Made by a program: the position numbers and the translations under genes. Positions 1 through 57,031 of a DNA stretch of 64,000 nucleotides are shown here, piece after piece. Source of the DNA: Octopus sinensis. Taxonomy: Eukaryota. Numbering within the stretch: the stretch's first letter is position 1; every line of letters begins with the position of its first letter. Under the pieces are notes generated by a model. The model saw nothing but the letters and a program-made list of their open reading frames with translations, did no database searches and was not told the origin of the DNA. The DNA lies in assembly GCF_006345805.1 (NCBI RefSeq), contig NC_043018.1:6510001-6574000 (forward strand), read 5' to 3'.

Positions 1-1
1 T

Positions 2-2788
2 TCGGTTGAAACGAAAGAAACATCTAAAAAAGGCTCTCGTTCGCGTAAAGGTACTCCTCAAAAATCTTCTGTAAAAGGCCCACGTAAAAAATCCACTTCG
101 AGGAAATCAACTCCAGTGAGAAAGGCAACCCCTACGAAAACGCGTACTCCGAGAAAGGGTACTCCATCTAGAGAAAGAAAGGCTACTCCCACAAGAAAGG
201 CCACCCCCACAAGGAAGGCCACCCCCACAAGAAAGGCCACACCCACAAGAAAGGCCACACCCACAAGGAAGGCCACACCCACAAGAAAGGCAAAGAAAGC
301 CACTCCGTCTAGGGAAGCAACTCCTGCCAGAAAATCCAGTACTCCTGTCAGAGAGGCTACTCCTGCTAGAAAATCTGCCACCCCACTTCGAGAAAGTTCT
401 CCTGCTACAAAATCTGCCTCTCCAGCTCGAGAAAGTACTCCTGCAAGAAAGGCCACTCCTTCTAGAGAAGCAACTCCTGCTAGAAAGGGTACTCCTGCTA
501 GAAAGACTACTGCTACTAGAAAGGGTACTCCTGCTAGAAAGGGTACTCCTACTAGAAAGGCCACACCTTCTCGAGAAACAAGCGTTTCGAGAAAATCGTC
601 TCCAAAGAAGGTGACCCCTTCTAGGGAGGTTACACCTGCGAGAAAGAGTACTACTAGGAAAGCAACACCTTCTAGGAGAGGATCTCCATCCAAAGCAGTC
701 AAAGAGAAGACATCACGACGGAAATCTAGTGGAAAGAAGTCACAGAAAACATCACGGTCTCGAAGCAAAACAAAGAGAGTCCACAAGCGTTCTTCTTCAA
801 AGAAAGCCGACAAGAAGAAAACAGTGCTGGCCACGCAGGAAAAAGAAGAATCCTTGTCTACTGTTGATGGGGCTGAGGAAAAAACAGCACCGCCCCCACA
901 AAAGACTGCCACCAGTAGCTCTTCTATGTCTACAATAATCACCGGTCTCTTTAAGCATTTCGTCCCAAGCCAGAAAAAGGCAAAAGTAGTTGAGTCCACC
1001 ACAAGCACGGATACCACCACCACAACAACAACAACAGTTGGTGGTTCCATGGCAGCTGAGTCTGAAGTTGATACAGGGGAAGAACTGAGAAGGAAGATAC
1101 CAGAGGCAAGAAAACACGCACTGATTTCTTCACCTCTGGATTCCAGCACACCTGATGTTCCCCAGGTTCCTAAAGCATCTTTCGTTAGTAGACTGAGAGA
1201 GACAGCTTCAAGCCTGTCCCCATTTGCCCTGAGCAGGTCGTTCGAGTATAAGCGTGCTGTTGTAGCATCAGCTAACAACAAGACTGTAGAGATTTCGGAG
1301 ACGATCACACATCCAGGAACGACTGCTGGCAAAGGATTTGATGAGGCTGACCAACCAATGTCAGCAGTTGAAATGACCGCCAATGAAGATACGGAGAGCT
1401 CCACTCCTGCAACAGTTGAAGAGGATGAAAGCGAGCAAAAGCAAGATGAAAAAGTTGTCGACACACGAGAAGTGCATTACGAGTCCCAGGAATCAGAAAT
1501 GGATGACGGGTCGATCATTGATAAGCTGGTTCATTATGAGTCCCAGCAGTCTGAGATAGAGGAGGTAGAAGCTGATAATCAGAAAAGTGTTCACTATGAG
1601 TCCCAGCATGACACTGAGGAAGAGTCCCAGGTTGAGACAGAAGATGACTCCCAGGCTGAGGTGGAGAATGAGGTGGAAGAAGAGTCACATGATGTGGTGG
1701 AGAAAAAGACACATGTTGAAGAAGAAGAAGTGTCACTTGATGTGGTAGGGAAAAAGATCCATGTTGAAGAAGAAGTGTCACTTGATGTGGTAAAGAAAAA
1801 GACCCATGTTGAAGAAGAAGAGGAGGAAGAAGAAGAAGAAGAGGAGGAGGAAGAGTCACATGATGTGGTGGAGAAAAAGACCTATGTTGAGGAACAAGAG
1901 TCCCAAGCTGAGACAGAAGAAGAGTCCCAGGTCGAGACAGAAGAAGAGTCGCAGGTTGAAACAGAAGAGTCACATGATGTGGTGGAGAAAAAGACCTATA
2001 TTGAGGAACAAGAGTCCCAGGGCGAGACAGAAGAGGAGTCCCAGGTCGAGACAGAAGAAGAGTCCCAGATTGAGACAGAGAATGACTCCCAAGTGGAGTC
2101 TCAGGTTGAGTCTGGGCAGGAGTCCCAAATTGAAACAGAAAATGAATCCCTGCTTGAGATGGAAAACAAGATAGATGATGGTGCTGCTGAAATATCCAAT
2201 ATCACTATGGATACAGAGGAGTTTGTTTCATCCAAAAGAAATGTAACCGTCCACTACGAGTCACAAGAGTCGGAATTGCTCACAGAGGAAGAAGACGATG
2301 GTTCCTGTGTAGTGAATGATGTCGAGGCCTCTGCTGCTATTGCTGATGGTGATAATGTGAAAAAAGTTGAAGAGTCAGATCTCACTGAAGAGGATGTAGA
2401 GAAAGGAAAAGAACATGGTGTTTGTGAATATGTCAAAGAACACCTTATCACAGTCAACAACAAAGGTGAAGAAGAAGAAGAGGAAGATGTAGGGGGAAGG
2501 GTATTGACTAGAAGACAAGCAGCAGCGGCGGCAGCTGCAGCAATGACAGGAACGTCGTTGAGGACAAAAAGAACAACAACGACGACGACAACGACAAGAA
2601 AATCAGTGCTGGGTAAGAGAGGAGCCGAGAAGCTGCTAGAAGCTACCGACTACGACTTGGAGCCGCCAAAGAAGATCTTCACCGAGGTGATGGACGAGGA
2701 TGAGGCGATGGCTGACAACGATGAGGAGGCGAAGGCCCTCTACGACTCATATTACTCTGGCTACGGATTACGCTGCACCATCCTCTGA
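2..2788 (+). CDS. 5'-truncated low-complexity protein (>=928 aa): basic TPxK/R repeat block, Glu-rich SQ block, C-terminal CaaX (CTIL)
   Basis: The frame of the 116..2788 ORF is open back to base 2 (SVETKETSKKGSRSRKGTPQK...), so the GTG at 116 is not the true start. The ORF is 2.8 kb with no stop. Its repeat units vary at synonymous positions. It ends ...YYSGYGLRCTIL* (2774-2788). Confidence 0.9.
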   Translation, partial: SVETKETSKKGSRSRKGTPQKSSVKGPRKKSTSRKSTPVRKATPTKTRTPRKGTPSRERKATPTRKATPTRKATPTRKATPTRKATPTRKATPTRKAKKATPSREATPARKSSTPVREATPARKSATPLRESSPATKSASPARESTPARKATPSREATPARKGTPARKTTATRKGTPARKGTPTRKATPSRETSVSRKSSPKKVTPSREVTPARKSTTRKATPSRRGSPSKAVKEKTSRRKSSGKKSQKTSRSRSKTKRVHKRSSSKKADKKKTVLATQEKEESLSTVDGAEEKTAPPPQKTATSSSSMSTIITGLFKHFVPSQKKAKVVESTTSTDTTTTTTTTVGGSMAAESEVDTGEELRRKIPEARKHALISSPLDSSTPDVPQVPKASFVSRLRETASSLSPFALSRSFEYKRAVVASANNKTVEISETITHPGTTAGKGFDEADQPMSAVEMTANEDTESSTPATVEEDESEQKQDEKVVDTREVHYESQESEMDDGSIIDKLVHYESQQSEIEEVEADNQKSVHYESQHDTEEESQVETEDDSQAEVENEVEEESHDVVEKKTHVEEEEVSLDVVGKKIHVEEEVSLDVVKKKTHVEEEEEEEEEEEEEEESHDVVEKKTYVEEQESQAETEEESQVETEEESQVETEESHDVVEKKTYIEEQESQGETEEESQVETEEESQIETENDSQVESQVESGQESQIETENESLLEMENKIDDGAAEISNITMDTEEFVSSKRNVTVHYESQESELLTEEEDDGSCVVNDVEASAAIADGDNVKKVEESDLTEEDVEKGKEHGVCEYVKEHLITVNNKGEEEEEEDVGGRVLTRRQAAAAAAAAMTGTSLRTKRTTTTTTTTRKSVLGKRGAEKLLEATDYDLEPPKKIFTEVMDEDEAMADNDEEAKALYDSYYSGYGLRCTIL

Positions 2789-3409
2789 GAACCCTGTTGC
2801 TCCCCTGCTGTTTTGCATCTCAGCTCCCCTAAAGACGCTGTTGGTAGAAACTGCCTTCCCCTCTCTCTCATCTGATGCCTTGTTCCTCAGAGGTACCAAT
2901 TTCCATAAAATTCATTTTTATCTTTTTGTCCCTCTCACTTGACAGACCCAAGGCAGCTGCTGCATCATAAAGCTTCCTCTCCCTTTTCTTTATTGTAATT
3001 AAAAATTTTTATTTTTAGATGCAAGTGCGTGCACACATATGTAGGGTTTAATTTGTCATCATTCCTTACCCTTTCTCCATGAAATGCCCTACGGCCACTA
3101 CCATCGTGCACACGCTACACAAGCACATACTCATATGCACACATGGCCCATGTATACAAATATGCACATGTGTGCATATACAAATATTCATAATTTGACA
3201 TGTTCATCGTGTGCTTGCTTGCATGGATGCACATATGCACTTAGGTGCACATACAAATATAGATATAGTTACACCAACATGCACACACATATACACGTTT
3301 GAATTAACATATACACCTATGGATACATTCATGCATATACAAGTTCTCATAGTTTGATACGTTTGTGAAAGCTCACTAACATGCATGCACATGTGCACAT
3401 ATGCACTCA

Positions 3410-4030
3410 TACAAATATAAATACAGCCACTCCTTAACATGTCCACACACACACACACACACATGCGTGTATTCTTTAAGATGTATACATACACATATGC
3501 ATGCATACACAAACATGGATACTTCAACATGGTCACGCCTCATCATGAACACACATACACACAAACATTAACACGTACATGTATGCCCACATGCATGCAC
3601 TAAAACACTCATACAATTATAAATAGTCACATCTCAACATGTGCACACATGTATGCATATACAAACATGTATACTTCAACATGGTCACACCTCAACATGA
3701 ACACACACACACACACATTCTTTAACACATACATGCATGTCCACATGCATGCTTGCTCGCATGCATGCACTTCAACACCCATACGATTATAAATACAGTC
3801 AAATCTCAGCATGTGCACACATGCATGCATATACAAACATGCATACTTCAACATGAACACACACATTCTTTAACACATACATGCATGCTTGCTCGCATAC
3901 AATTATGAATACAGTCACATCTCAACATGTACAAACATGCATACTCCAACATGGTCAAGCATATTTGCTCACATGCACGCACTTAAGCGCACATACGATT
4001 ATTATACAGTTACACCTCAACGTGTACGTA
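3410..4030. repeat. Degenerate ~130-bp minisatellite in CATG/CA-rich DNA
   Basis: Recurring AAATACAGTCACATCTCAACATGTGCACAC...TACTTCAACATGG units, about 4-5 copies. Confidence 0.7.
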
Positions 4031-4788
4031 CAGACACGATGTACTCAGCCACGTAAATACATGCATTTTTTTAGACACAGAAACATTATACACACAGCAA
4101 GCTGTGTGTATACTTCACTATACTCATTATTCCTTCCTCAATTTACATTGCAGCATCCTTTAACAATAAACATCCCTGAGTGATGAGGGAGTTTTGAGGC
4201 CCCTCACCCCCCAGCCAGCTTTAGGGTCTGCCTGTCTTTTTTTTGTTTTTTTTTCGCCCTCCACCTCTCTCTGCTCGCCTTCTCATATCTCCTCTTGAAA
4301 TGGTGCCTGCTGGCCATTTCGGCATTTCACACACGTGTGGATATCATCAGAATGCGCCAGAAAGACATTTTTATGAAAAAAACTTTTTTTTTTTTTTGGT
4401 GTTTCTTTCTTTTTCTTTTTTTTTCTCTCCCATTTTTGCGGGGAGGGAGGGGGGAAGGAAGTATCCTGGGCAACCGAAACAAAAACAAGGAACGGCTACG
4501 AGAAAGTTTTCATCATTGTTACCATTTATTCTCTTCCTTGCTGTTGTCATTACTAACACTACTACCACAACTACCACCAACCACCACCACTACTACTACT
4601 ACTACTGATGCCACCACTATCATTGACAACATTAACTACATTAATACCATTGACATGATCACTAAAGCAAATCATATATACACATATACTCACACATATA
4701 TGTATTTGTATATATGTGTATGTGTACATATATATATTTTTATATACGTGTGTGTGTGTACATATATGTATGTGAACATGTATACTTG

Positions 4789-4882: not shown

Positions 4883-6122
4883 TATGAGGTTGAGCCAAAA
4901 TGTTAATCTGTCTTTTTTTGAGGGAAAATTAGACGTAAATTTTAAGCGTTAAGCAATATATTTAATCAGTGATATAATTTCTTCTGCTCGTTTGTGGGCG
5001 AGTCCATTGTTTGCTGCTCAAAGAGTTTCCTGTCTTTACTGGTCAAGAACTCTACTTGGGTGAAGTTTTTTAGATCCATGTCAGAGATGGAAGTCTGTCC
5101 ATTCAGTAAATTTCAAAAAAACCGAAAAATGTGGAAATCTGAAGGTGCTAGGTTGGGCAAATATTGGCAAGTGTGAGAAAACTTCCAAGCCAAACCAGCC
5201 CTCAACGTCTGCAAAGAAGTGAGCCATCTGGCATTGTTGTGATGGAAGACAAATACCTTTATGATCAATAAATTCCGGATGCTTCTGGTGGATTGTTATG
5301 TTTAATTTGTGGCGCTGGTCACAGTACACATCTGAATTGATGGTCTGGTTTGTGGGAAGAAGATTGTAAAAGAGAACACCCATCCATTCCCACCAGATTG
5401 ACAGCATAACGTTCTTTTCAGTCAAGTACTGCTTGGAGGTTGTTTGTAGTTGTTCACCACACTTTTACTTCACGTTGTTCTACACGATCCATTTTTCCTC
5501 CCCGAATGCCATTCTCTTCAAAAACGGGATCGTTTATTTATGCATCTGCTACAAATCACTGATGGCCATTTGTTGGGCTCCATCCTCCTCATCCAATGGG
5601 TGTGGAACTCAAACATCAAGCCTGCAGACATAACCAAGTCAATGTAGATGGCTTTCAACACTTGATTTGAATATTTAGAGAATATCTGTGATGAACCTCG
5701 TCATAGAACAGGACTTGGTCTTGGGTAACTTCTTTGTTGCTGTTAATCTTAGTTGGCCAGCCAGAATGATTTGCATTTTCAATGGAAAAATTTCCCCATC
5801 AAAATCTTGCAAACCATTTCCATCACACAACATTCCATAACAGCATCCTCTCCTCTCTGTACACAGCACGTCTTCCTGAAGGTTCCCGTTGATTTTGCGC
5901 ATGACATATCGATCGTGTTTGCGTGCTTGAGATCAACCTGGAAATGGAGAACCAAAGCAAAATACAGTCTGTCCTGTCGCGAGTTCGTGTTGAACTATGT
6001 TAGTGTGTCGGGTATCTCTTGAGTGTGCATGCCCATAAGGAAAGGAAAGCAAACAGCGTTGGGTATATTAAACGAGTACACATGCGCAAAGGGAAAACAG
6101 CAAACGTTTGGCCAACCCTATA
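4883..6122 (-). mobile_element. Near full-length decayed mariner transposon (~1.24 kb)
   Basis: Minus-strand remnants read RLDV(W)VPH, NDPFLKRMAFGEEKWIV and KNVMLSIWWEWMGVLFYNLLPTNQTINSDVYC, with stops and frameshifts. Degenerate TIRs TA-TGAGGTTGAGCCAAAATGTT and TA-TAGGGTTGGCCAAACGTT. Confidence 0.9.
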
Positions 6123-17302: not shown

Positions 17303-17575
17303 ATAAGACAGTAAGGTGTGATTTGAGGGAGATTTGGCTACTATTTCTACCATGTCTAGCTGCCATGTAGGGGTCTCCCTCATAGGCTCATACATACATA
17401 TATACATAGATAAGACAGTAAGGTGTGATTTGGGGGAAATTTGGCTGCTATTTCTACCAGGTCTAGCTACCATGTAGAGGTCCCCCTCATTGGCTCATAT
17501 ATATATACATACATAAGACAGTAAGGTGTGATTTGAGGGAGATTTGGCTGCTGTTTCTACCAGGTCTGTTAGGCC
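17303..17575 (+). repeat. Three tandem ~105-bp copies of a dispersed repeat fragment
   Basis: ATAAGACAGTAAGGTGTGATTTG(A/G)GGGA(G/A)ATTTGGCT...TTTCTACCA three times. Confidence 0.85.
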
Positions 17576-18723: not shown

Positions 18724-19147
18724 TATATAATAATTATTAGTTGAGGGAATTATATACGTTTTTATTATTATTTTTTTGCAATTTACTTAATCATTGACAC
18801 TTTATTGTTATTTTAATTTTAATTTATTATATGTAATTTTCTAGATGGTGTAATTTAATTGTTTCATTTTGAATTGATAAAAGGTGGGTTTTTTTTCTAA
18901 TTATATATTTTCTAATTATATATTTTTTTCATACATATATGAAAACAAAACGAGGCAAGAGAAATAAAAGTGATATGTATTTGCACAACATTGTCCAGAC
19001 AATGGACATGAGTTGGAATAATAAAATAAGAACAGAAATAAACAAGTGAAGAAAACTATACAGTGTGTGTGTTTATGTGGTAAAAAAAGGAAAGAAATGA
19101 CTGTCCCAAAATACAACATATATATAAATACATACATATGTATATAT

Positions 19148-19188
<41 letters not shown>

Positions 19189-19367
19189 CATATATACATA
19201 TATATATATATACATACATATATACATATATATATATACATACATATATACATATATATATATATACATACATATATACATATATATATATACATACATA
19301 TATATATATATATATATACATACGTATATACATATATATACATACATATATATATATATACACATAC

Positions 19368-19399
<32 letters not shown>

Positions 19400-19488
19400 G
19401 CATACATATACATGTATATGTGTATATATATATGTGTGTATATATGTATATATATATATGTGTGTGTATATATATATGTATATATATA

Positions 19489-19529
<41 letters not shown>

Positions 19530-19570
19530 ATTTATATATATATATATATATACACACACATATATATGTG

Positions 19571-19612
<42 letters not shown>

Positions 19613-26024: not shown

Positions 26025-26520
26025 GGATGGCTTAGTAGTTAGAGTGTTGGACTCATGATCGTAAGATTGTGATTTCAGTTCTTGGACTGGGCAATGCATT
26101 GTGTTCTTGAGCAAAACACTTAATTTCATGTTGCTCCTATCCATTCAGCTGGCAAAAATGAGTAATCCTGCGATGGACTGGCATCCCATCCAGGTGTGGA
26201 ATTTACACGCCACAAAACCAGGAAATTGGCCCTTATGAGTCAGCATGACTAGAGAAGGTAACTTTACCTTTCTGTGAAGGAGCGATGCTTAGTGGTTAGG
26301 GTGTTAGACTTATGATCGTAAGATTGTGGTTTCGATTCCTGGACTGGGCGATGTGTTGTGATCTTGAGCAAGACACTTCATTTCGTGTTGCTCCAGTCCA
26401 CTAAGCTGGCAAAAGTGAGTAATCCTGCTTTGAACCGGTGTCCCATCCAAGTGGGGTATTTATATGCCATGAAACTGGGAAAATGGCCCTTATGAGTCAA
26501 GAAGATGACTTTACCTTTTT
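26025..26520 (+). mobile_element. Tandem pair of tRNA-derived SINEs (family 4)
   Basis: GGCTTAGTAGTTAGAGTGTTGGACTCATGATCGTAAG...CTTGAGCAA(A/G)ACACTT twice. Related minus-strand copy at ~35940-36076. Confidence 0.75.
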
Positions 26521-28296: not shown

Positions 28297-29409
28297 TGGT
28301 ACCTTGACTTATGAGTGTCCCAACTAAAGAGGTTTTTGAGATATCAGCCATCTCTTGGCTGAATTTTTGCTTTGAGTTGCAAGCTAAAATTCAGGTTACA
28401 ACCCAGCTTCAGACACCCCACTGCTAATTGGTATAGTGAACGCCAAATTGAATGCCATAACATCTGCCCAGCATCCCGTGTCTCACTTGATAGCTAGACA
28501 GAAATACATGTTAACAAGTGTAAAAGACCATTAGTAAATCGATAGCTAGACAGGCATGCACGCCAGGAAGTGCAAAGATCATTAGTGGATCGTTAGCTAG
28601 ACGGGTGGTAAAATGCTTACTTAATTGTTTCAGGCTACAGAAGCATCGATGTTGTGCTTTTAATTGAGCTTTAAGTGTTTTTTGTAGGGCCTGGAATGGA
28701 TTATTGGCATTTCAAGTCATTTCAATGAGGAAAACTGATTTGATGTATGAGTAATTTGAGTTACAAGCTCCATCACAGAATGAATTAAAATTGTAACTCA
28801 AGGTACCACTGTGCATCGTCATCGTCAATGTCAACGTCAATGTCAATGTCATCATCATTTAGTGTCTGTTGTCCATACTGGCATGGGTTGGACAGCTGGA
28901 AGGCTGCACCAGGATCCCATCTGATTTGGCATGGTTTTCTACGGCTGGAGGCCATATATTTTTCCAACAAGACTCAACAAGACACGACGGCAAGTTGACA
29001 GAAATGTTAGCAAGCCAGGCGAAATGCTTGGCGGTATTTCATCTGCCGTTACGTTCTGAGTTCAAATTCTGCCGAGGTCGACTTAGCCTTTCATCCTTTT
29101 GGGGTCAATTAAATAAGTACCAGTTATGCACTGGGTCAGTGTAATCGACTTAATCTGGTTGTCTGTCCTTGTTTGTCCCTTCTGTGTTTAGCTCCTTGTG
29201 GGTAGTAAAGAAATAGGTATTTTGTCTGCCGTTACGTTCTGAGTTCAAATTCCGCCGAGGTCGACTTAGCCTTTCATCCTTTCGGGGTCGATTAAATACG
29301 TACCAGTTATGCACTGGGTCGATGTAATCGACTTAATCCCTTTGTTTGTCCTTGTTTATCCCCTCTATGTTCAGCCCCTTGTGGCAATAAAGAAATAAGA
29401 AATAGGTCT

Positions 29410-38739: not shown

Positions 38740-39730
38740 GGGGGGGGGCATGGTGGTGGTGGTGGTAGTGGGGAGATAGCCATGTGTTGCGGGGTGTGTG
38801 GGGGAGGCACTTGTCATTGCATCTTCTTCCCCCACCCCTCCCCCTTCTCCCTTCCTCCACCCACCTGCCATCCCTTCCCCTGTCCCTCCGCTGCATAATG
38901 TCTTCTCTGTTACACTTGACTGATTACTTAACTGCATCTCTCTGTTGCTGCCACCACCACCACCACCACCACCACCTTATCATCGTCATCATCATCATCA
39001 TCATCATCATCGTCGTCGTCGTCGTCGTCATCTCTAACAACATTATTCTCTATAATTTCACTACCTGTACAACATTTAGTATGTTAACACACCAAACCCG
39101 CCCCCACACACCACTGGCACCAGCAGCACCACCACCACAACCACAACCATCACAACAACTACCACCACCACAACAGCCGCTACCACCATCAACCCCATCA
39201 CCACCACCACCACTACCACAGCCACCACCATCACCACCAATACCACCGCCGCAGCCAACTCCATCACCATTATCATCATCATCATCACCATCACCACTAC
39301 CACCGCCGCCGCCACCAACCCCATCGCCATTATCATCATCACCACCATCACCACTACTACCACAGCCACCACCACTACCACCGCCACCACCACCACCACT
39401 ACCACAGCCGCCACCACCACCACCACTGCCACTACACCACCAACCCCATCACCATTATCATCATCATCATCATCACCACCACTACCACCACCACAGTCAC
39501 CACCACCACCACCACCACCACCACACACCCTACCACCACCACCACTACCAAAGACAGCACTGTTGAGATTCCTTTACACATAATTAGCATCATCATTGTC
39601 ATCACAGCTAATGTTATACACACACACACACACACATACACACCACCACCAGCGTCCCCCCCACCAGCGTCCCCCACCACCACCACCACTATCATCATCA
39701 TCATCATCATCCTCCTCATCACCAGCATCA
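38740..39730. repeat. (CAC/CAT)n trinucleotide low-complexity tract
   Basis: Long mixed CAC/CAT/CGT runs that generate the spurious His/Pro/Val-rich ORFs. Confidence 0.9.
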
Positions 39731-48384: not shown

Positions 48385-49446
48385 AAAAGAAAGAGCAGCA
48401 TTGGTGTCAAACCTGCTGGGAATTGAACCTGGGTAAGATAACTAAACTAGATTTTGCATAGATGCAACAGTAAAGGTGATGTTGGCGCTGATGGGAACTG
48501 AACCCTAGACAGTCATCATCATCATCATCGTTTAACATCCGTTTTCCGTGCTAGCACGGGTTAGATGGTTTGACCGGGGTCTGGGAAGCCAGGAGGCTGC
48601 ACCAGGCTTCAGTCTGATCTGGCAATGTTTCCACAGCTGAATGCCCTTCCTAATGCCAACCACTCCGTGAGTGTAGTGGGTGCTTTTTACATGCCACCGG
48701 CACAGGTGCCAGTCAAGGCGGCGCTGGCATCAGCCACGTTCGGATGGTGCTTTTTACGTGCCACTGGCACAGAAGCCAGTCAGGGTGGCGCTGGCATCGG
48801 CCACGTTCGGATGGTGCTTTTTATGTGCCACCGGCACAGGTATCACAACTACTATTTCCATTTGATATTTATTTCGATGTTCATGTACTTGACTTAATAA
48901 GTCTCCTCAAGCACAGCAGGTTGTTCTGAAATCCAAGGTACTTTGAATAGGCTGGGGCTATGCGGAACTGGTGCAGGAAGCAGCCCGGGTCTTTGCAGTC
49001 ACAGCATATCTCCAGAGATCTCGGTCCTTCATCATTGCCTCTGTGAGGCCCACAAAAGAAAGAGAAATGCTGATGTTGACTTGGTTGGGAATTGAACACT
49101 GGACAGTGAGGTAACTGAGCTAAATATTACATAGAAGAAAGAAAAATACTGATGTTGGCTTGTGTAGGAATTGAACCCTGAACATTTTGGTGACTAAACT
49201 AGATACTGCACAGAAGAAAGAAAAATGTTAATGTTGGCTCTGGTGGGAGCTGAAGCTTCAACAGAAGTAACCAAGTTAGATATTACATGAAAGAAAAAAA
49301 ACGTTGATGTGGGCTCTGATGGGAATTGAAACCTGGGCAGTGTGATACCTAAATTTGATACTTCACAGAGAAAGAAAAATGTTGGTGTTGGATCTGGTGG
49401 GAGTTGAACCTAGGGCAACATGATAACCAAGCTACATGCCACATAG
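48385..49446 (-). repeat. Tandem array of ~78-bp tRNA-like units interrupted by a dispersed-repeat insertion
   Basis: Five units at 49055-49446 (period 76-80) and about two at 48385-48510. Each reads A-box-like TAG(C/T)T(C/T)(A/G)GT, B-box GGTTCAATTCC, then a T-rich tract on the minus strand. Confidence 0.8.
48512..49040 (+). mobile_element. Abundant dispersed repeat starting with (CAT)n
   Basis: CATCATCGTTTAAC..CCG.TTTCC.TGCTAGCA.GGGTT...GCTGGATGCCCTTCCTAA. Copies at ~13150-13545(-), 31660-31850(-), 44165-44410, 47245-47450, 52320-52545(-) and 58330-58710. Confidence 0.8.
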
Positions 49447-49680
49447 TCTCTCATCCGTCAGTGTTGACAGAAATATTATGATACAATTCCCCAGGACATG
49501 TCTAATTAACACGGAGACATCTTTAATTAGAGTTGTCTTAATTAATTATTATGTGTTTATTATTTAGTACTCACTTATACCTTCACATACTAACATATAT
49601 ACTTGCATACATATATATGTACACACATATACATACATACACACATATATATATATATATATACGTATCTATATATACGC

Positions 49681-49712
<32 letters not shown>

Positions 49713-49782
49713 ATATATATATACATACATATATATGTACACACACACACATATACATACATAACATGTATATACTTATATG

Positions 49783-49839
<57 letters not shown>

Positions 49840-51689
49840 ATAATATTATACCTATGTATGTACATATATATATACCTATATAGGTATATATAATATATAT
49901 ACCTATATATGTACATATATATGTATATATATACATGTATGTATATATATATGTATATATATATATTATATATATATATATATATACACATATATATATA
50001 GATAGATATATGAATATAACTTGTGTGTCTGTGATTATATTATATATATATATATGTATGTATGTATATGTGTTTGAGAAAAAGAAAGATTTTGTGGAAA
50101 ATATGTCTGTGAGAGTGAGAGCAGATGTGTGCATGTGTGTGAAATAGAGAGTGTGTGCGTGTCTGTCTCTGTGTGTCCATGAGTGCATGCATTTGTGTTT
50201 GTGAAGTGTCCTGTCTGCTGAAATGCAACACAAACACTAACACACACAGAGACACAAACACACGCGTACACACACAAGCACACATGCCTGCATACACACA
50301 CATAATAGAACAGTCACATACATTCTTATAAAACTTCTGTCCCTCTTTAATATAAACATACTCATACACTTACACACACACAAACACATTTTTGTGCATA
50401 AATGTGTGATGAATTGTATGTCTGCAGAATAACAGAAAACCCACATACATACATACATACATTACATACATGCACACATGTACATAAAAACAGGCACATA
50501 CACACACACACACACGTTGACTAGAATTTTTGTTTTATTTTATTAGTTAGTCAAGGGGAAGAAGAGAAGAAGGAGGACGAGGAGGAGTAAGAGGGGGAAG
50601 CAGTACCCACGACCTTTCCAACTAAATATCAACATAGACTAATGTCGAAAGTTCTAAGACATTGTTAATTTGATAGCTAAGTATTGGCTACAAAAATACA
50701 TGCACACACACACAAACACATTTATGTACAGGGACACACAAACACATAAACAGACAGGCGACACACACACACACACATATATGTATATATATATATCCTT
50801 ATTTAAGTACACATATATATTCATAAGAAGGAAACTCATATATTAAAGACAGATATATGTGTGCAAGAAAATTTTTCTCTATGATATATGTGAAGCTATA
50901 CGTAGCATTAAAAAGTGTGTTTACTGATGATGAGCACTCGGCTTTGGTATGAACATTATTAATGTGTGAGACTTTTTATTAGTTGGTCAGAAGGAGATGA
51001 GGAGAGACAGTGGAACCTTGGTGCTGATGGCTTTGACCTTTGTATGAGTCAATCCAGACTGGTTAATATTGATGTGGTGGTCGGTTGAACTATCTGCAGG
51101 TTGACATATAGACATGAGAATTGGTAGAAATGTTAGAGTGTTGGATAGGAGTATATTTTGTGGTATTTATCATGATGCTGTGAGATTCAGAAGTTCAAAT
51201 CCTACTGCGATCAACTTTGCTCTTCAAATAGCAATAACAGAATGGTGAAATTGCAGAACTGGGAGAATATTGGATCGGATGTTTTGTGGTATTTGTTTTG
51301 ACTCTTTGTATCATCATGATCACGATCATCATCGTTGTCATCATGATCATCATCGTTGTCATCATCATCATCATCACCGTCAGTCACCACCAATTGTCTC
51401 TACCATATCACCACCACCACCACCACCAGCAGAAGCACCATCACCATCAGCACTATCTACCATCACTACCACCAGCACCATCACACCACCACCAGTCCAT
51501 CAGGTTTGAAGTACCATAGATTGAATCTACATAATTCTAAGTCAGGAATTTTGCAGCCCCCCTTGTACTTGGAACTAGGTGGGCTATGTCATCTTTTAGT
51601 TACTTACTTAGATCTAATGACTGTGGACTCACCATCACCACCACCACAACCACTGCTGCCCCAATGTGGGAGTCCTAGGAAAGGGAAGA

Positions 51690-53857: not shown

Positions 53858-53957
53858 NNNNNNNNNNNNNNNNNNNNNNNNNNNNNNNNNNNNNNNNNNN
53901 NNNNNNNNNNNNNNNNNNNNNNNNNNNNNNNNNNNNNNNNNNNNNNNNNNNNNNNNN
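53858..53957. other. Assembly gap (100 N)
   Basis: Run of exactly 100 N. Confidence 1.
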
Positions 53958-56459: not shown

Positions 56460-56619
56460 TTATATCTATCTGTATCCTTATCCAGTCATCTATCTATCTC
56501 TCTGTCTGTCTGTCTGTCAGTATGCCTATCTTTCCATCCATCTATCTATCTATCTGTCTGTCTGTCTGTCTGTCTGTCCGTCCGTCCGTCCGTCCATCCG
56601 TCCATTCATCCATCCATCC

Positions 56620-56661
<42 letters not shown>

Positions 56662-56840
56662 TTCTCTATCTATGCTTCTAATTATCTATCTATCTATTTA
56701 TCCATCTCTATTTCTCTATCTATGCTTCTAATAAATTATCTATCTACCTATCTATCTGTTTATCTATCTATCTATGTATCTATCTATCTATCCATCTATC
56801 TATCTATCTATCTAATTATCTATCTGCCTATCCATCCATG

Positions 56841-56907
<67 letters not shown>

Positions 56908-56981
56908 ATATCTAACTATCTATCTATCTATTTCTCTATCTATGCTTCTAATAAATTATCTATCTGCCTATCCATCTATAA

Positions 56982-57031
<50 letters not shown>

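What the first reader, a model, noticed from the sequence alone, without database searches (positions are those of the whole stretch)
2..2788. Charge-polarised, CaaX-terminated disordered protein: candidate prenyl-anchored chromatin or nuclear-envelope protein
Seen: a Lys/Arg-rich repeat N-terminus, a ~400-aa Glu-rich middle, a basic patch (RKSVLGKR...PPKK) and the terminal CTIL*. Known: C-aliphatic-aliphatic-Leu is a geranylgeranyltransferase-I signal, as in G-protein gamma subunits. An NLS plus CaaX targets lamins and Drosophila Kugelkern to the inner nuclear membrane. Inference: this may be a lineage-specific, membrane-anchored histone-H1/protamine-like DNA tether. No globular domain is visible, and the N-terminus lies outside the window.
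Basis: partly seen in the sequence, partly recalled or inferred. Interest (0 to 1): 0.75.

Follow-up and report, generated by a model that had tools for sequence, protein, structure and literature searches.

The report
Disordered charge-block protein ending in CaaX
The window starts inside a real 928-codon coding exon for a long, unfolded protein with a basic, CDK-site-rich front, an acidic middle and a C-terminal CTIL that is a proven geranylgeranylation signal in other proteins, but no relatives could be found, so a role as a lipid-anchored nuclear-envelope or chromatin tether remains an untested idea.

Summary
Window 2-2785 (+) is one open frame of 928 codons that runs off the 5' edge and ends CTIL-stop. 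The longest open stretch in 2,000 composition-matched simulations was 224 codons. Repeat periods are all multiples of 3, and repeated peptide motifs keep their residues through synonymous changes.

The protein has a +77 basic block with 29 S/T-P-x-K/R sites, a block of net charge -87 at residues 481-740 within a longer acidic region, and no Pfam family, PDB relative or confident fold. CTIL is experimentally geranylgeranylated in OAS1 p46 and in a Ydj1 reporter. The in-frame GTAAGA donor-like site before the tail is at chance level, and exon-like composition runs up to the stop, so CTIL is probably the true C-terminus.

Nothing beyond motifs supports prenylation, nuclear-rim targeting or DNA tethering:
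- Three word searches, one exhaustive HMMER search and three DNA-collection scans found no relative, not even the protein itself. Conservation of the Cys and "lineage-specific" are therefore both untestable here.
Better bipartite patterns lie at residues 225-275.
- The organism was not established. If it is a cephalopod, the published absence of CaaX in all cephalopod lamins makes this a candidate worth a bench test.

Verdict: a real orphan disordered protein with a plausible but unproven function.

The parts
2..2785 (+). Open reading frame of 928 codons, 5'-truncated by the window edge. Probably the large 3'-terminal coding exon of a gene whose start lies upstream.
   Evidence: no stop in 928 codons, against a maximum of 224 in 2,000 simulations. 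All tandem-repeat periods are multiples of 3.
2..856 (+). Basic Ser/Thr/Pro-rich repeat block (residues 1-285, net charge +77) holding most of the protein's 29 S/T-P-x-K/R (full CDK-consensus) sites, including 22 TPxR(K/E) units.
179..286 (+). Six exact KATPTR hexapeptide repeats (18-nt units).
   Evidence: 6 synonymous and 0 non-synonymous differences from the unit consensus. One search shows that the wobble-aligned antisense frame is also invariant, so this array shows constraint but does not identify the coding strand.
674..826 (+). Densest K/R/S cluster (residues 225-275), holding most of the classical bipartite NLS-pattern matches, including KR-X10-DKKKT at 258-274.
857..1441 (+). Mixed Ser/Thr-rich, non-repetitive segment (residues 286-480). 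Two low-confidence helices and one beta-hairpin at about residues 414-437 (window 1241-1312).
   Evidence: mean pLDDT 55.5, pTM 0.20. Only the hairpin reaches about 85.
1442..2506 (+). Acidic block (residues 481-835; net -87 over 481-740). Contains EESQVETE-type and SHDVVEKKT(H/Y)VEE-type repeats, an 18-residue run of Glu, and four VHYESQ motifs at residues 491, 510, 530 and 750.
   Evidence: The VHYESQ peptides are kept with synonymous codon variation while their flanks differ.
2507..2785 (+). C-terminal tail (residues 836-928): Ala8 and Thr8 runs, the basic patch RKSVLGKR (2597-2620), an acidic stretch and a Tyr-rich linker before the Cys.
   Evidence: No confident fold (mean pLDDT 44).
2774..2785 (+). 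CaaX box C-T-I-L (residues 925-928), of the GGTase-I type.
   Evidence: Literature on the same tetrapeptide.
2786..2788 (+). Stop codon TGA.
2610..2618 (+). Donor-like site TGG|GTAAGA inside the frame (last exon base would be 2612). A second, AAG|GTGAAG, lies at 2463-2471.
   Evidence: sites this good occur 1.28 per kb on the + strand of the window. Judged to be chance.
2998..3003 (+). ATTAAA, a candidate polyadenylation signal 210 nt after the stop. An AATAAA follows at 4165-4170.
   Evidence: Motif only, with no transcript evidence.

Best explanation
Window 2-2788 is the 3'-terminal part, most likely one large last exon, of a gene for a long (>928 aa), intrinsically disordered, block-polyampholyte protein.

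Proposed mechanism (inferred, not shown):
1. The basic N-proximal block has 22 TPxR(K/E) units and most of the protein's 29 full CDK-consensus sites. It binds a polyanion, most likely DNA/chromatin or RNA, in the manner of the S/T-P-K-K tails of linker histones and the TPxKK region of nucleolin.
2. CDK phosphorylation weakens that binding in mitosis.
3. The acidic block can compete with the basic block within the same molecule, or recruit basic partners such as histones.
4. Bipartite NLS-type clusters at residues 225-275 bring the protein into the nucleus.
5. The C-terminal CTIL is geranylgeranylated by GGTase-I, so the far end of the chain sits in a membrane. With nuclear import, that membrane would be the inner nuclear membrane.

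Shown here: a real translated frame, charge blocks, the motifs, the lack of a domain, and a probable true C-terminus. Inferred: nuclear localisation, polyanion binding, CDK control, lipidation and membrane anchoring.
For: - The open frame is far beyond chance, and the other five frames are closed.
- Repeat periods are all multiples of 3.
- Repeat copies differ mostly synonymously: KATPTR 6:0, the 114-nt unit 4:4 against 19% expected, and VHYESQ kept four times with wobble changes.
- Charge blocks of +77 and -87, with segregation well above every shuffle.
- 29 S/T-P-x-K/R sites and 18 classical bipartite-NLS pattern matches.
- No Pfam or PDB relative and no confident fold.
- No transmembrane-like segment: the maximum 19-aa Kyte-Doolittle mean is 0.67.
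- CTIL is validated elsewhere. OAS1 p46 is geranylgeranylated through CTIL, Ydj1-CTIL is fully modified by human GGTase-I, and yeast Rsr1 ends CTIL.
- The chance of a C-x-[ILVMF]-[LF] ending is about 2e-5 from the protein's own composition and 2.6e-4 from the tail's.
- The tail looks exonic. GC is 0.54-0.55 up to the stop and falls to 0.37 after about 2900. Purine content switches at the stop, not at the donor-like site. The other two frames of the tail hold 2 and 4 stops.
- GFP-NLS-CaaX alone acts on the nuclear membrane.
Against: - There is no orthologue, so conservation of the Cys, the tail and the NLS is unknown.
- There is no transcript evidence. The tail being open for 58 codons has a chance probability of 0.06-0.15, so a splice at 2612|2613 or 2465|2466 is not excluded.
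- The 11-residue linker before the Cys has four Tyr and one Leu, which fits the PrePS 'small or flexible, hydrophilic' rule only in part.
- Context matters: OAS1 'common+CTIL' was not membrane-targeted.
- The basic patch next to the tail is not a canonical NLS.
- The N-terminus is unseen. It could carry a signal peptide or a domain that changes the picture.
- Every functional step rests on motif-level analogy.
Confidence: 0.3

Rival explanations
1. A soluble nuclear, nucleolar or mitotic-chromosome charge-block protein, working like Ki-67, nucleolin's N-terminal region or Nopp140. Function comes from CDK-tuned electrostatic binding or condensation. The CTIL ending is incidental, unmodified or of minor importance.
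For: The same charge-block, CDK-site and NLS-pattern evidence applies. The linker before the Cys is atypical for prenylation substrates. CTIL alone did not suffice for membrane targeting in one OAS1 construct.
Against: A full GGTase-I-type box at the exact C-terminus is rare by chance, 2e-5 to 3e-4. This exact tetrapeptide is efficiently modified in reporters. No RRM, GAR, SRP40_C or FHA domain is present in the visible 928 aa.
Confidence: 0.25
2. A cytoplasmic, prenyl-anchored disordered scaffold at the plasma membrane, endomembranes or cytoskeleton, working like paralemmin or a MAP-type basic S/T-P microtubule binder. The basic block binds acidic lipids or tubulin tails rather than DNA.
For: CTIL proteins such as OAS1 p46 and Rsr1 sit on cytoplasmic membranes. 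Basic S/T-P-rich repeats also typify microtubule-lattice binders (my own knowledge, not tested). There is no canonical NLS next to the anchor.
Against: Many bipartite NLS-pattern matches lie in residues 15-275. There is no Paralemmin or MAP family hit.
Confidence: 0.15
3. CTIL is not the C-terminus of the main product. The exon ends at a donor inside the frame (2612|2613 or 2465|2466) and splices to an exon further downstream, so the last 58-107 codons are intron read-through.
For: The consensus-like sites G|GTAAGA and G|GTGAAG are present. The chance that 58 codons stay open is not negligible, at 0.06-0.15.
Against: Such sites occur at 1.28 per kb in the window, so two in 2.8 kb is what chance gives. 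GC and purine content do not change at either site but do change at or after the stop. No conserved downstream exon was recognised: all other long ORFs lack Pfam hits except a transposase fragment.
Confidence: 0.15
4. A secreted, mucin-like or acidic matrix protein. The Pro/Thr/Ser repeats would be O-glycosylated, the Glu-rich block would bind cations, and CTIL would be meaningless.
For: T+S+P make up 43% of the basic block. There are Thr8 and Thr9 runs and five N-x-S/T sequons. The N-terminus, and so any signal peptide, is unseen.
Against: 32% K+R in the repeat block is unusual for mucin domains (my own knowledge). The S/T-P-x-K/R spacing fits kinase sites. There are only 3 Cys and no extracellular domain.
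Confidence: 0.07

Closest known systems
Drosophila Kugelkern (Kuk, also called Charleston)
   Same: Largely unstructured, taxon-restricted nuclear protein with an NLS and a C-terminal CaaX. It acts at the inner nuclear membrane independently of lamin filaments (PMC2947476).
   Different: Kuk is farnesylated, 570 aa, and has a putative coiled coil and two conserved boxes. This protein carries a geranylgeranyl-type box (X = Leu), extreme charge blocks and CDK-site repeats. No direct sequence comparison with Kugelkern was made. The exhaustive search with the tail returned no hit at all, but it is unknown whether that library holds Kugelkern.
B-type lamins / prelamin A
   Same: NLS plus CaaX logic for inner-nuclear-membrane targeting.
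   Different: No intermediate-filament rod or lamin-tail domain in 928 aa, and a geranylgeranyl-type rather than farnesyl-type box. According to PMC10125929, all 23 cephalopod species examined have lamins without CaaX. This is relevant only if the window is cephalopod.
Linker histone H1 C-terminal tails and sperm H1/H2B SPKK repeats; nucleolin N-terminal TPxKK plus acidic stretches
   Same: Repeated S/T-P-x-K/R in a very basic disordered region, and in nucleolin a juxtaposition with acidic runs. These are classical CDK-regulated polyanion binders (my own knowledge).
   Different: No winged-helix H1 globular domain, RRM or GAR domain. The charges here are split into two large blocks rather than interleaved, and those proteins have no lipid anchor.
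Human OAS1 p46, yeast Rsr1 (and G-gamma subunits as a class)
   Same: OAS1 p46 and Rsr1 have the identical C-terminal tetrapeptide CTIL, and OAS1 p46 is shown to be geranylgeranylated. G-gamma subunits share only the CaaL type of ending.
   Different: They are folded proteins on cytoplasmic membranes, unrelated in sequence. The resemblance is confined to four residues.
Paralemmin family
   Same: [quoted passage not shown]
   Different: No Paralemmin Pfam match. Paralemmins are plasma-membrane proteins with adjacent palmitoylated Cys residues, which are absent here.

Membership tests
CaaX substrates of GGTase-I | Cys exactly four residues from the C-terminus | tested here: met
   Cys925 of 928, followed by the stop at 2786-2788. 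This depends on the stop being the true end of the transcript's ORF (favours this, but there is no RNA evidence).
CaaX substrates of GGTase-I | a2 aliphatic and X = Leu/Phe, with the tetrapeptide shown to be a substrate | tested here: met
   a2 = Ile and X = Leu. CTIL is geranylgeranylated in OAS1 p46 (PMC8357416) and fully modified by HsGGTase-I on Ydj1 (PMC11152559).
CaaX substrates of GGTase-I | Flexible, small/hydrophilic linker of about 11 residues before the Cys (PrePS, PMC1175975) | tested here: inconclusive
   The linker is YDSYYSGYGLR. It has 5 small or acidic residues and Arg at -1, but also 4 Tyr and 1 Leu. It is modelled as coil with pLDDT < 50. The PrePS program itself was not available.
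CaaX substrates of GGTase-I | Covalent geranylgeranylation in vivo or in vitro | not testable with these tools
   Needs a biochemical assay.
CaaX substrates of GGTase-I | Cys and box conserved in orthologues | tested here: inconclusive
   No orthologue was retrievable.
Lamins | Intermediate-filament rod (Pfam Filament) and lamin-tail Ig-like domain | tested here: not met
   No Pfam family for the whole protein at E <= 1. The segment scans at E <= 10 gave only three unrelated sub-cut-off matches (DUF963, DUF5349, SplA).
Linker histone H1 | Winged-helix globular domain (Pfam Linker_histone) | tested here: not met
   Absent from the visible 928 aa. The unseen N-terminus cannot be excluded.
Linker histone H1 | Basic tail with S/T-P-x-K/R motifs | tested here: met
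   29 such sites and net +77 over residues 1-285. This is a resemblance in style, not homology.
Protamines / protamine-like sperm proteins | Small, Arg-dominated (typically over half Arg) proteins | tested here: not met
   41 Arg in 285 residues (14%), a protein of >928 aa, and a large acidic block. The definition is from my own knowledge.
Kugelkern-type NLS+CaaX nuclear-membrane proteins (a functional class) | NLS together with a C-terminal CaaX | tested here: met
   18 bipartite-pattern matches and CTIL. Motif level only.
Kugelkern-type NLS+CaaX nuclear-membrane proteins (a functional class) | Sequence homology to Kugelkern, or a farnesyl-type box | tested here: inconclusive
   The box is geranylgeranyl-type (X = Leu), so a farnesyl-type box is not met. 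No direct comparison with Kugelkern was made. The exhaustive search with the tail found no relative, but whether that library holds Kugelkern is unknown.
Nucleolin / Nopp140 | RRM and GAR domains, or the SRP40_C domain | tested here: not met
   No such Pfam hits.

The most novel reading that the evidence does not exclude
If the window is from a cephalopod, whose lamins are all reported to lack a CaaX box (PMC10125929), this orphan protein could be a non-lamin, geranylgeranyl-anchored link between chromatin and the inner nuclear membrane. Its H1-like, CDK-switchable basic block would hold chromatin, its acidic block would act as a built-in competitor or spacer, and its lipid tail would sit in the membrane. 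It would supply a prenyl-dependent anchoring function that lamins provide in other animals.
Probability: 0.1. Interest if true: 0.75.

Novelty: new member of a known kind. Interest (0 to 1): 0.4.

Why it matters
Prenylated nuclear proteins other than lamins are few, Kugelkern being the best-studied example. They show that a lipid tail plus an NLS can shape the nuclear envelope without filaments. A geranylgeranylated, CDK-regulated, H1-like tether would be a new architecture for attaching chromatin to the envelope.

In an animal group whose lamins have lost their CaaX box, it would give a concrete candidate for how membrane attachment is kept. The test is easy: a Cys-to-Ser mutant and a GGTase-I inhibitor on a tagged construct.

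If the CaaX is not used, the protein is just one more fast-evolving, low-complexity nuclear protein and is of modest interest.

Tried and rejected
**Searches for relatives (all blank)**
- Word-indexed protein search three times: residues 740-928 and 285-480 of the 928-aa query, then a 290-aa C-terminal query to reach shorter proteins.
- Exhaustive HMMER search of 1.84 billion representatives with residues 741-928: 0 hits at E <= 0.001, not even the query's own protein. I read this as a gap in the library for this organism, not as proof of an orphan.
- The search for related loci in viral, prokaryotic-genome and metagenome contigs.

**Family and structure searches**
- Pfam on the whole protein and on five segments. 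There were only sub-threshold low-complexity matches, which I rejected: DUF963 at 19.8 bits against a cut-off of 21, DUF5349 and SplA.
- PDB sequence searches gave only E >= 0.12 (uS12, cyclin-L1), also rejected.
- Structure search (fold search) was not run. Both models have pTM of about 0.2, and the tool warns that such models give meaningless matches.

**Window survey**
- Rfam and tRNA scans of the window found nothing.
- Pfam on 20 other ORFs found only a mariner transposase fragment.

**Tests that were weaker than hoped**
- The synonymous/non-synonymous test on the KATPTR array cannot tell the strands apart, because the wobble-aligned antisense frame is equally invariant. I identify the coding strand from the length of the + frame and from motifs beyond 1464.
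- My first script for the tail statistics timed out.
- My first bipartite-NLS regex had a bug, which made the '0 bipartite' line wrong. One search corrects it.

**Not done**
Everything was searched by reference to single stretches of the window.
- I do not take this contig for human.
Full report

Yes. Translating window 2-2788 on the + strand gives 928 sense codons and a single terminal stop, ending ...SYYSGYGLRCTIL*. The frame is open to the first base of the window. The first Met is residue 309, and the 308 codons before it have a strongly non-random repeat structure, so the start codon must lie upstream, outside the window.

The strand is T-poor (A 35%, T 18%), which favours long open frames. 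Even so, 2,000 first-order Markov simulations with the same composition gave a mean longest open stretch of 105 codons and a maximum of 224. The other five frames hold 15-86 stops. All 14 tandem-repeat rows in 1-4000 have periods that are multiples of three.

**2. Is it translated and constrained?**

No orthologues were available, so I used the internal repeats as a substitute.
- The six KATPTR units differ from their consensus by six synonymous and no non-synonymous changes. About 28% of random changes would be synonymous.
- The two 114-nt units differ by four synonymous and four non-synonymous nucleotide differences, in three conservative replacements (V/I twice and A/G). About 19% synonymous would be expected.
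- The peptide VHYESQ occurs four times (residues 491, 510, 530 and 750). Wobble positions vary (CAT/CAC, TAC/TAT, TCC/TCA, CAG/CAA) and the flanks differ.

One caveat came from a control. A 468-aa antisense ORF (58..1464) lies in the wobble-aligned frame, and its peptide is equally invariant across the KATPTR array. That array therefore shows constraint but does not identify the strand. The + strand is identified by the length of its frame and by the constrained motifs beyond 1464. The antisense ORF is probably a by-product of the sense strand using few TTA, CTA and TCA codons there (inference).

**3. Anatomy**

| Residues | Feature |
|---|---|
| 1-285 | Basic block, K+R 92 against D+E 15 (net +77). 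It holds most of the protein's 34 S/T-P dipeptides and 29 full CDK-consensus S/T-P-x-K/R sites, including 22 TPxR(K/E) units. |
| 225-275 | Densest K/R/S cluster, with most of the 18 classical bipartite-NLS pattern matches, e.g. KR-X10-DKKKT at 258-274. |
| 286-480 | Mixed Ser/Thr-rich, non-repetitive segment. |
| 481-835 | Acidic region (481-740: D+E 103, K+R 16, net -87), built from EESQVETE-type and SHDVVEKKT(H/Y)VEE-type repeats and an 18-residue Glu run. |
| 836-928 | Tail: Ala8, Thr8, RKSVLGKR, an acidic stretch, then YDSYYSGYGLR-CTIL. |

- Charge segregation is 0.117 against 0.050 +/- 0.005 for shuffled residue order (highest shuffle 0.073), giving a kappa-like value of about 0.33.
- There is no transmembrane-like segment. 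The maximum 19-aa hydropathy mean is 0.67.
- The protein has only three Cys and no Trp.

**4. Is there a domain?**

None could be found.
- Pfam on the whole protein at E <= 1 gave nothing.
- Pfam on five separate segments at E <= 10 gave only sub-cut-off low-complexity matches.
- PDB sequence searches gave only E >= 0.12.
- Single-sequence AlphaFold2 gave mean pLDDT 44 and pTM 0.18 for residues 741-928.
- For residues 286-480 it gave mean pLDDT 55.5 and pTM 0.20. The only confident element was a beta-hairpin at about residues 414-437.

Single-sequence models are weak evidence, but everything points to intrinsic disorder. I did not run structure searches on these models, because at this confidence the matches would be meaningless.

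**5. Is CTIL the real C-terminus?**

Two donor-like sites lie inside the frame: AAG|GTGAAG (exon end 2465) and TGG|GTAAGA (exon end 2612). The second sits just before the tail.

Sites this good occur 82 times on the + strand of the window, or 1.28 per kb, so two in 2.8 kb is what chance gives.

Composition argues for continued exon:
- GC is 0.54-0.55 in 2601-2800 and 0.51 in 2801-2900. It falls to 0.37 only after 2900. The window outside the ORF averages 0.367.
- Purine content changes at the stop, from 0.64 and 0.50 to 0.34, not at the donor-like site.
- The other two frames of 2613-2788 hold 2 and 4 stops.

The chance that 58 codons stay open is 0.06-0.15, so this is supportive rather than decisive. 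ATTAAA at 2998 and AATAAA at 4165 are candidate poly(A) signals. I put the probability that CTIL ends the main product at about 0.7. Transcript data would settle it.

**6. Is CTIL a valid prenylation signal?**

As a tetrapeptide, yes, and the literature deals with this exact sequence.
- Human OAS1 p46 ends in CTIL and is geranylgeranylated. Cys-to-Ala abolishes this, and adding CTIL to the p42 isoform was used to test sufficiency (PMC8357416).
- Ydj1-CTIL was among the few reporters fully modified by human GGTase-I at low enzyme level (PMC11152559).
- Yeast Rsr1 ends in CTIL (PMC11304957).

The chance of a C-x-[ILVMF]-[LF] ending is about 2e-5 from this protein's composition and 2.6e-4 from the tail's. 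The scan has looked at many ORFs, so some chance cases are still to be expected.

Two cautions apply.
- PrePS describes an 11-residue linker of small or flexible, preferably hydrophilic residues before the Cys (PMC1175975). Here the linker has four Tyr and one Leu among Ser, Gly, Asp and Arg.
- An OAS1 construct with CTIL placed directly on the common core was not membrane-targeted, so context matters.

**7. Relatives**

None were found. This must be read carefully.
- Three word-indexed searches were blank. One of them used a shorter query, as the operators advised.
- The family scans and word searches left the protein open, and 'lineage-specific' rests on absence, so I used the exhaustive HMMER search on residues 741-928. 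It gave 0 hits at E <= 0.001 among 1.84 billion representatives.
- Scans of viral, prokaryotic-genome and metagenome contigs were blank.

Not even the query's own protein came back. The most economical reading is that this organism's proteome, and perhaps its relatives', is not in these collections, or that the gene is not annotated with this tail.

So neither 'lineage-specific' nor 'Cys conserved' can be judged here. The searches show only that the tail has no detectable relative among what the collections do hold.

**8. Organism and surroundings**

The rest of the window is AT-rich (GC 0.367). It is full of (TA)n, (TGTA)n, (ATCT)n and (CAC)n arrays and SINE-like repeats, and it has a 100-N scaffold gap.
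- There are no Rfam or tRNA hits.
- There is no other recognisable coding sequence except a mariner-type transposase fragment at 5084-5464 on the minus strand.

This fits a large invertebrate genome. I do not take the contig for human.

**9. What it most likely is and does**

Shown: the terminal part of a real gene for a long, disordered, block-polyampholyte protein with dense CDK-consensus sites, NLS-type clusters and a competent GGTase-I box at a probable true C-terminus.

Inferred: the basic block binds a polyanion, such as chromatin or RNA, under CDK control, as H1 tails and nucleolin's TPxKK region do. The acidic block competes with it or recruits basic partners. The NLS clusters drive nuclear import. 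A geranylgeranyl group fixes the C-terminus in a membrane. Together with nuclear import, that would place the protein at the inner nuclear membrane, following the principle that GFP-NLS-CaaX and Kugelkern act there (PMC2947476).

I give this full chain a probability of about 0.3. The rivals are:
- a soluble nuclear charge-block protein with an unused CaaX (0.25);
- a cytoplasmic prenyl-anchored scaffold (0.15);
- a tail that is spliced out (0.15);
- a secreted mucin-like or acidic matrix protein (0.07).

**10. Comparison with known systems**

In function it is closest to Kugelkern-type NLS+CaaX proteins, but it is not shown to be related to them in sequence. It is not a lamin, a linker histone, a protamine, a paralemmin or a nucleolin/Nopp140 protein, because the defining domains were tested and not found.

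It differs from Kugelkern and the lamins in having a geranylgeranyl-type rather than a farnesyl-type box, and in its two large opposite charge blocks.

**11. Novelty and interest**

As it stands, this is a new, orphan member of a known kind: disordered proteins with a CaaX anchor.

One item of context raises the stakes. A survey of 23 cephalopod species found only lamins without CaaX, ending instead in a conserved aromatic motif (PMC10125929). If the window is cephalopod, a non-lamin prenylated nuclear protein would be a candidate for the missing lipid anchor. The Tyr-rich stretch just before the Cys recalls that paper's suggestion that aromatic residues help membrane association, but this is speculation.

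All functional evidence is at motif level, and neither conservation nor the organism could be checked, so I score interest at 0.4. The novel reading gets a probability of about 0.1 and an interest of 0.75 if true.

Noticed in passing
window 5084-5464 (-): An open frame of 127 aa matches Pfam Transposase_1 (mariner-type partial DDE domain) at E = 9.6e-19, covering profile positions 15-77 of 80. It is a fragment of a mariner-like transposon about 2.3 kb downstream of the stop codon.
   Followed up: partly
window 58-1464 (-): A 468-aa antisense ORF rich in V/L/S/F lies in the wobble-aligned frame opposite the basic block. Its peptide (FLVGVA) is as invariant across the KATPTR array as the sense peptide. 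It is most likely a by-product of the sense strand using few TTA, CTA and TCA codons, not a gene.
   Followed up: partly
window 1472-1489, 1529-1546, 1589-1606, 2249-2266 (+): The hexapeptide VHYESQ recurs four times in the acidic block, with synonymous codon variation and divergent flanks. This suggests a conserved short linear motif of unknown partner, with an SQ core and acidic context.
   Followed up: partly
window 26030-26499, 29033-29397, 17303-17567, 48679-48839, 49057-49427: Tandem pairs or short arrays of 67-257-bp units with 79-91% matches look like SINE or other interspersed-repeat copies. None reached an Rfam gathering score, and ARAGORN found no tRNA.
   Followed up: no
window 53858-53957: A run of exactly 100 N, which is an assembly scaffold gap.
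   Followed up: no
window 3000-4100 (+): The sequence just after the stop is a long CA/TG-rich stretch of degenerate 'acatgcatgc...cacacaca...tcaacatg' units that recur every 130-190 nt by eye. Tandem Repeats Finder did not report it. It may be 3' UTR or a decayed satellite.
   Followed up: no
window 39118-39550, 19118-19602, 56488-57031, 49607-50069: Very long microsatellites: (CAC)n of about 145 copies, (AT)n of about 240 copies and (ATCT)n of about 136 copies. They create most of the window's other long 'ORFs' and its local GC-skew swings.
   Followed up: no
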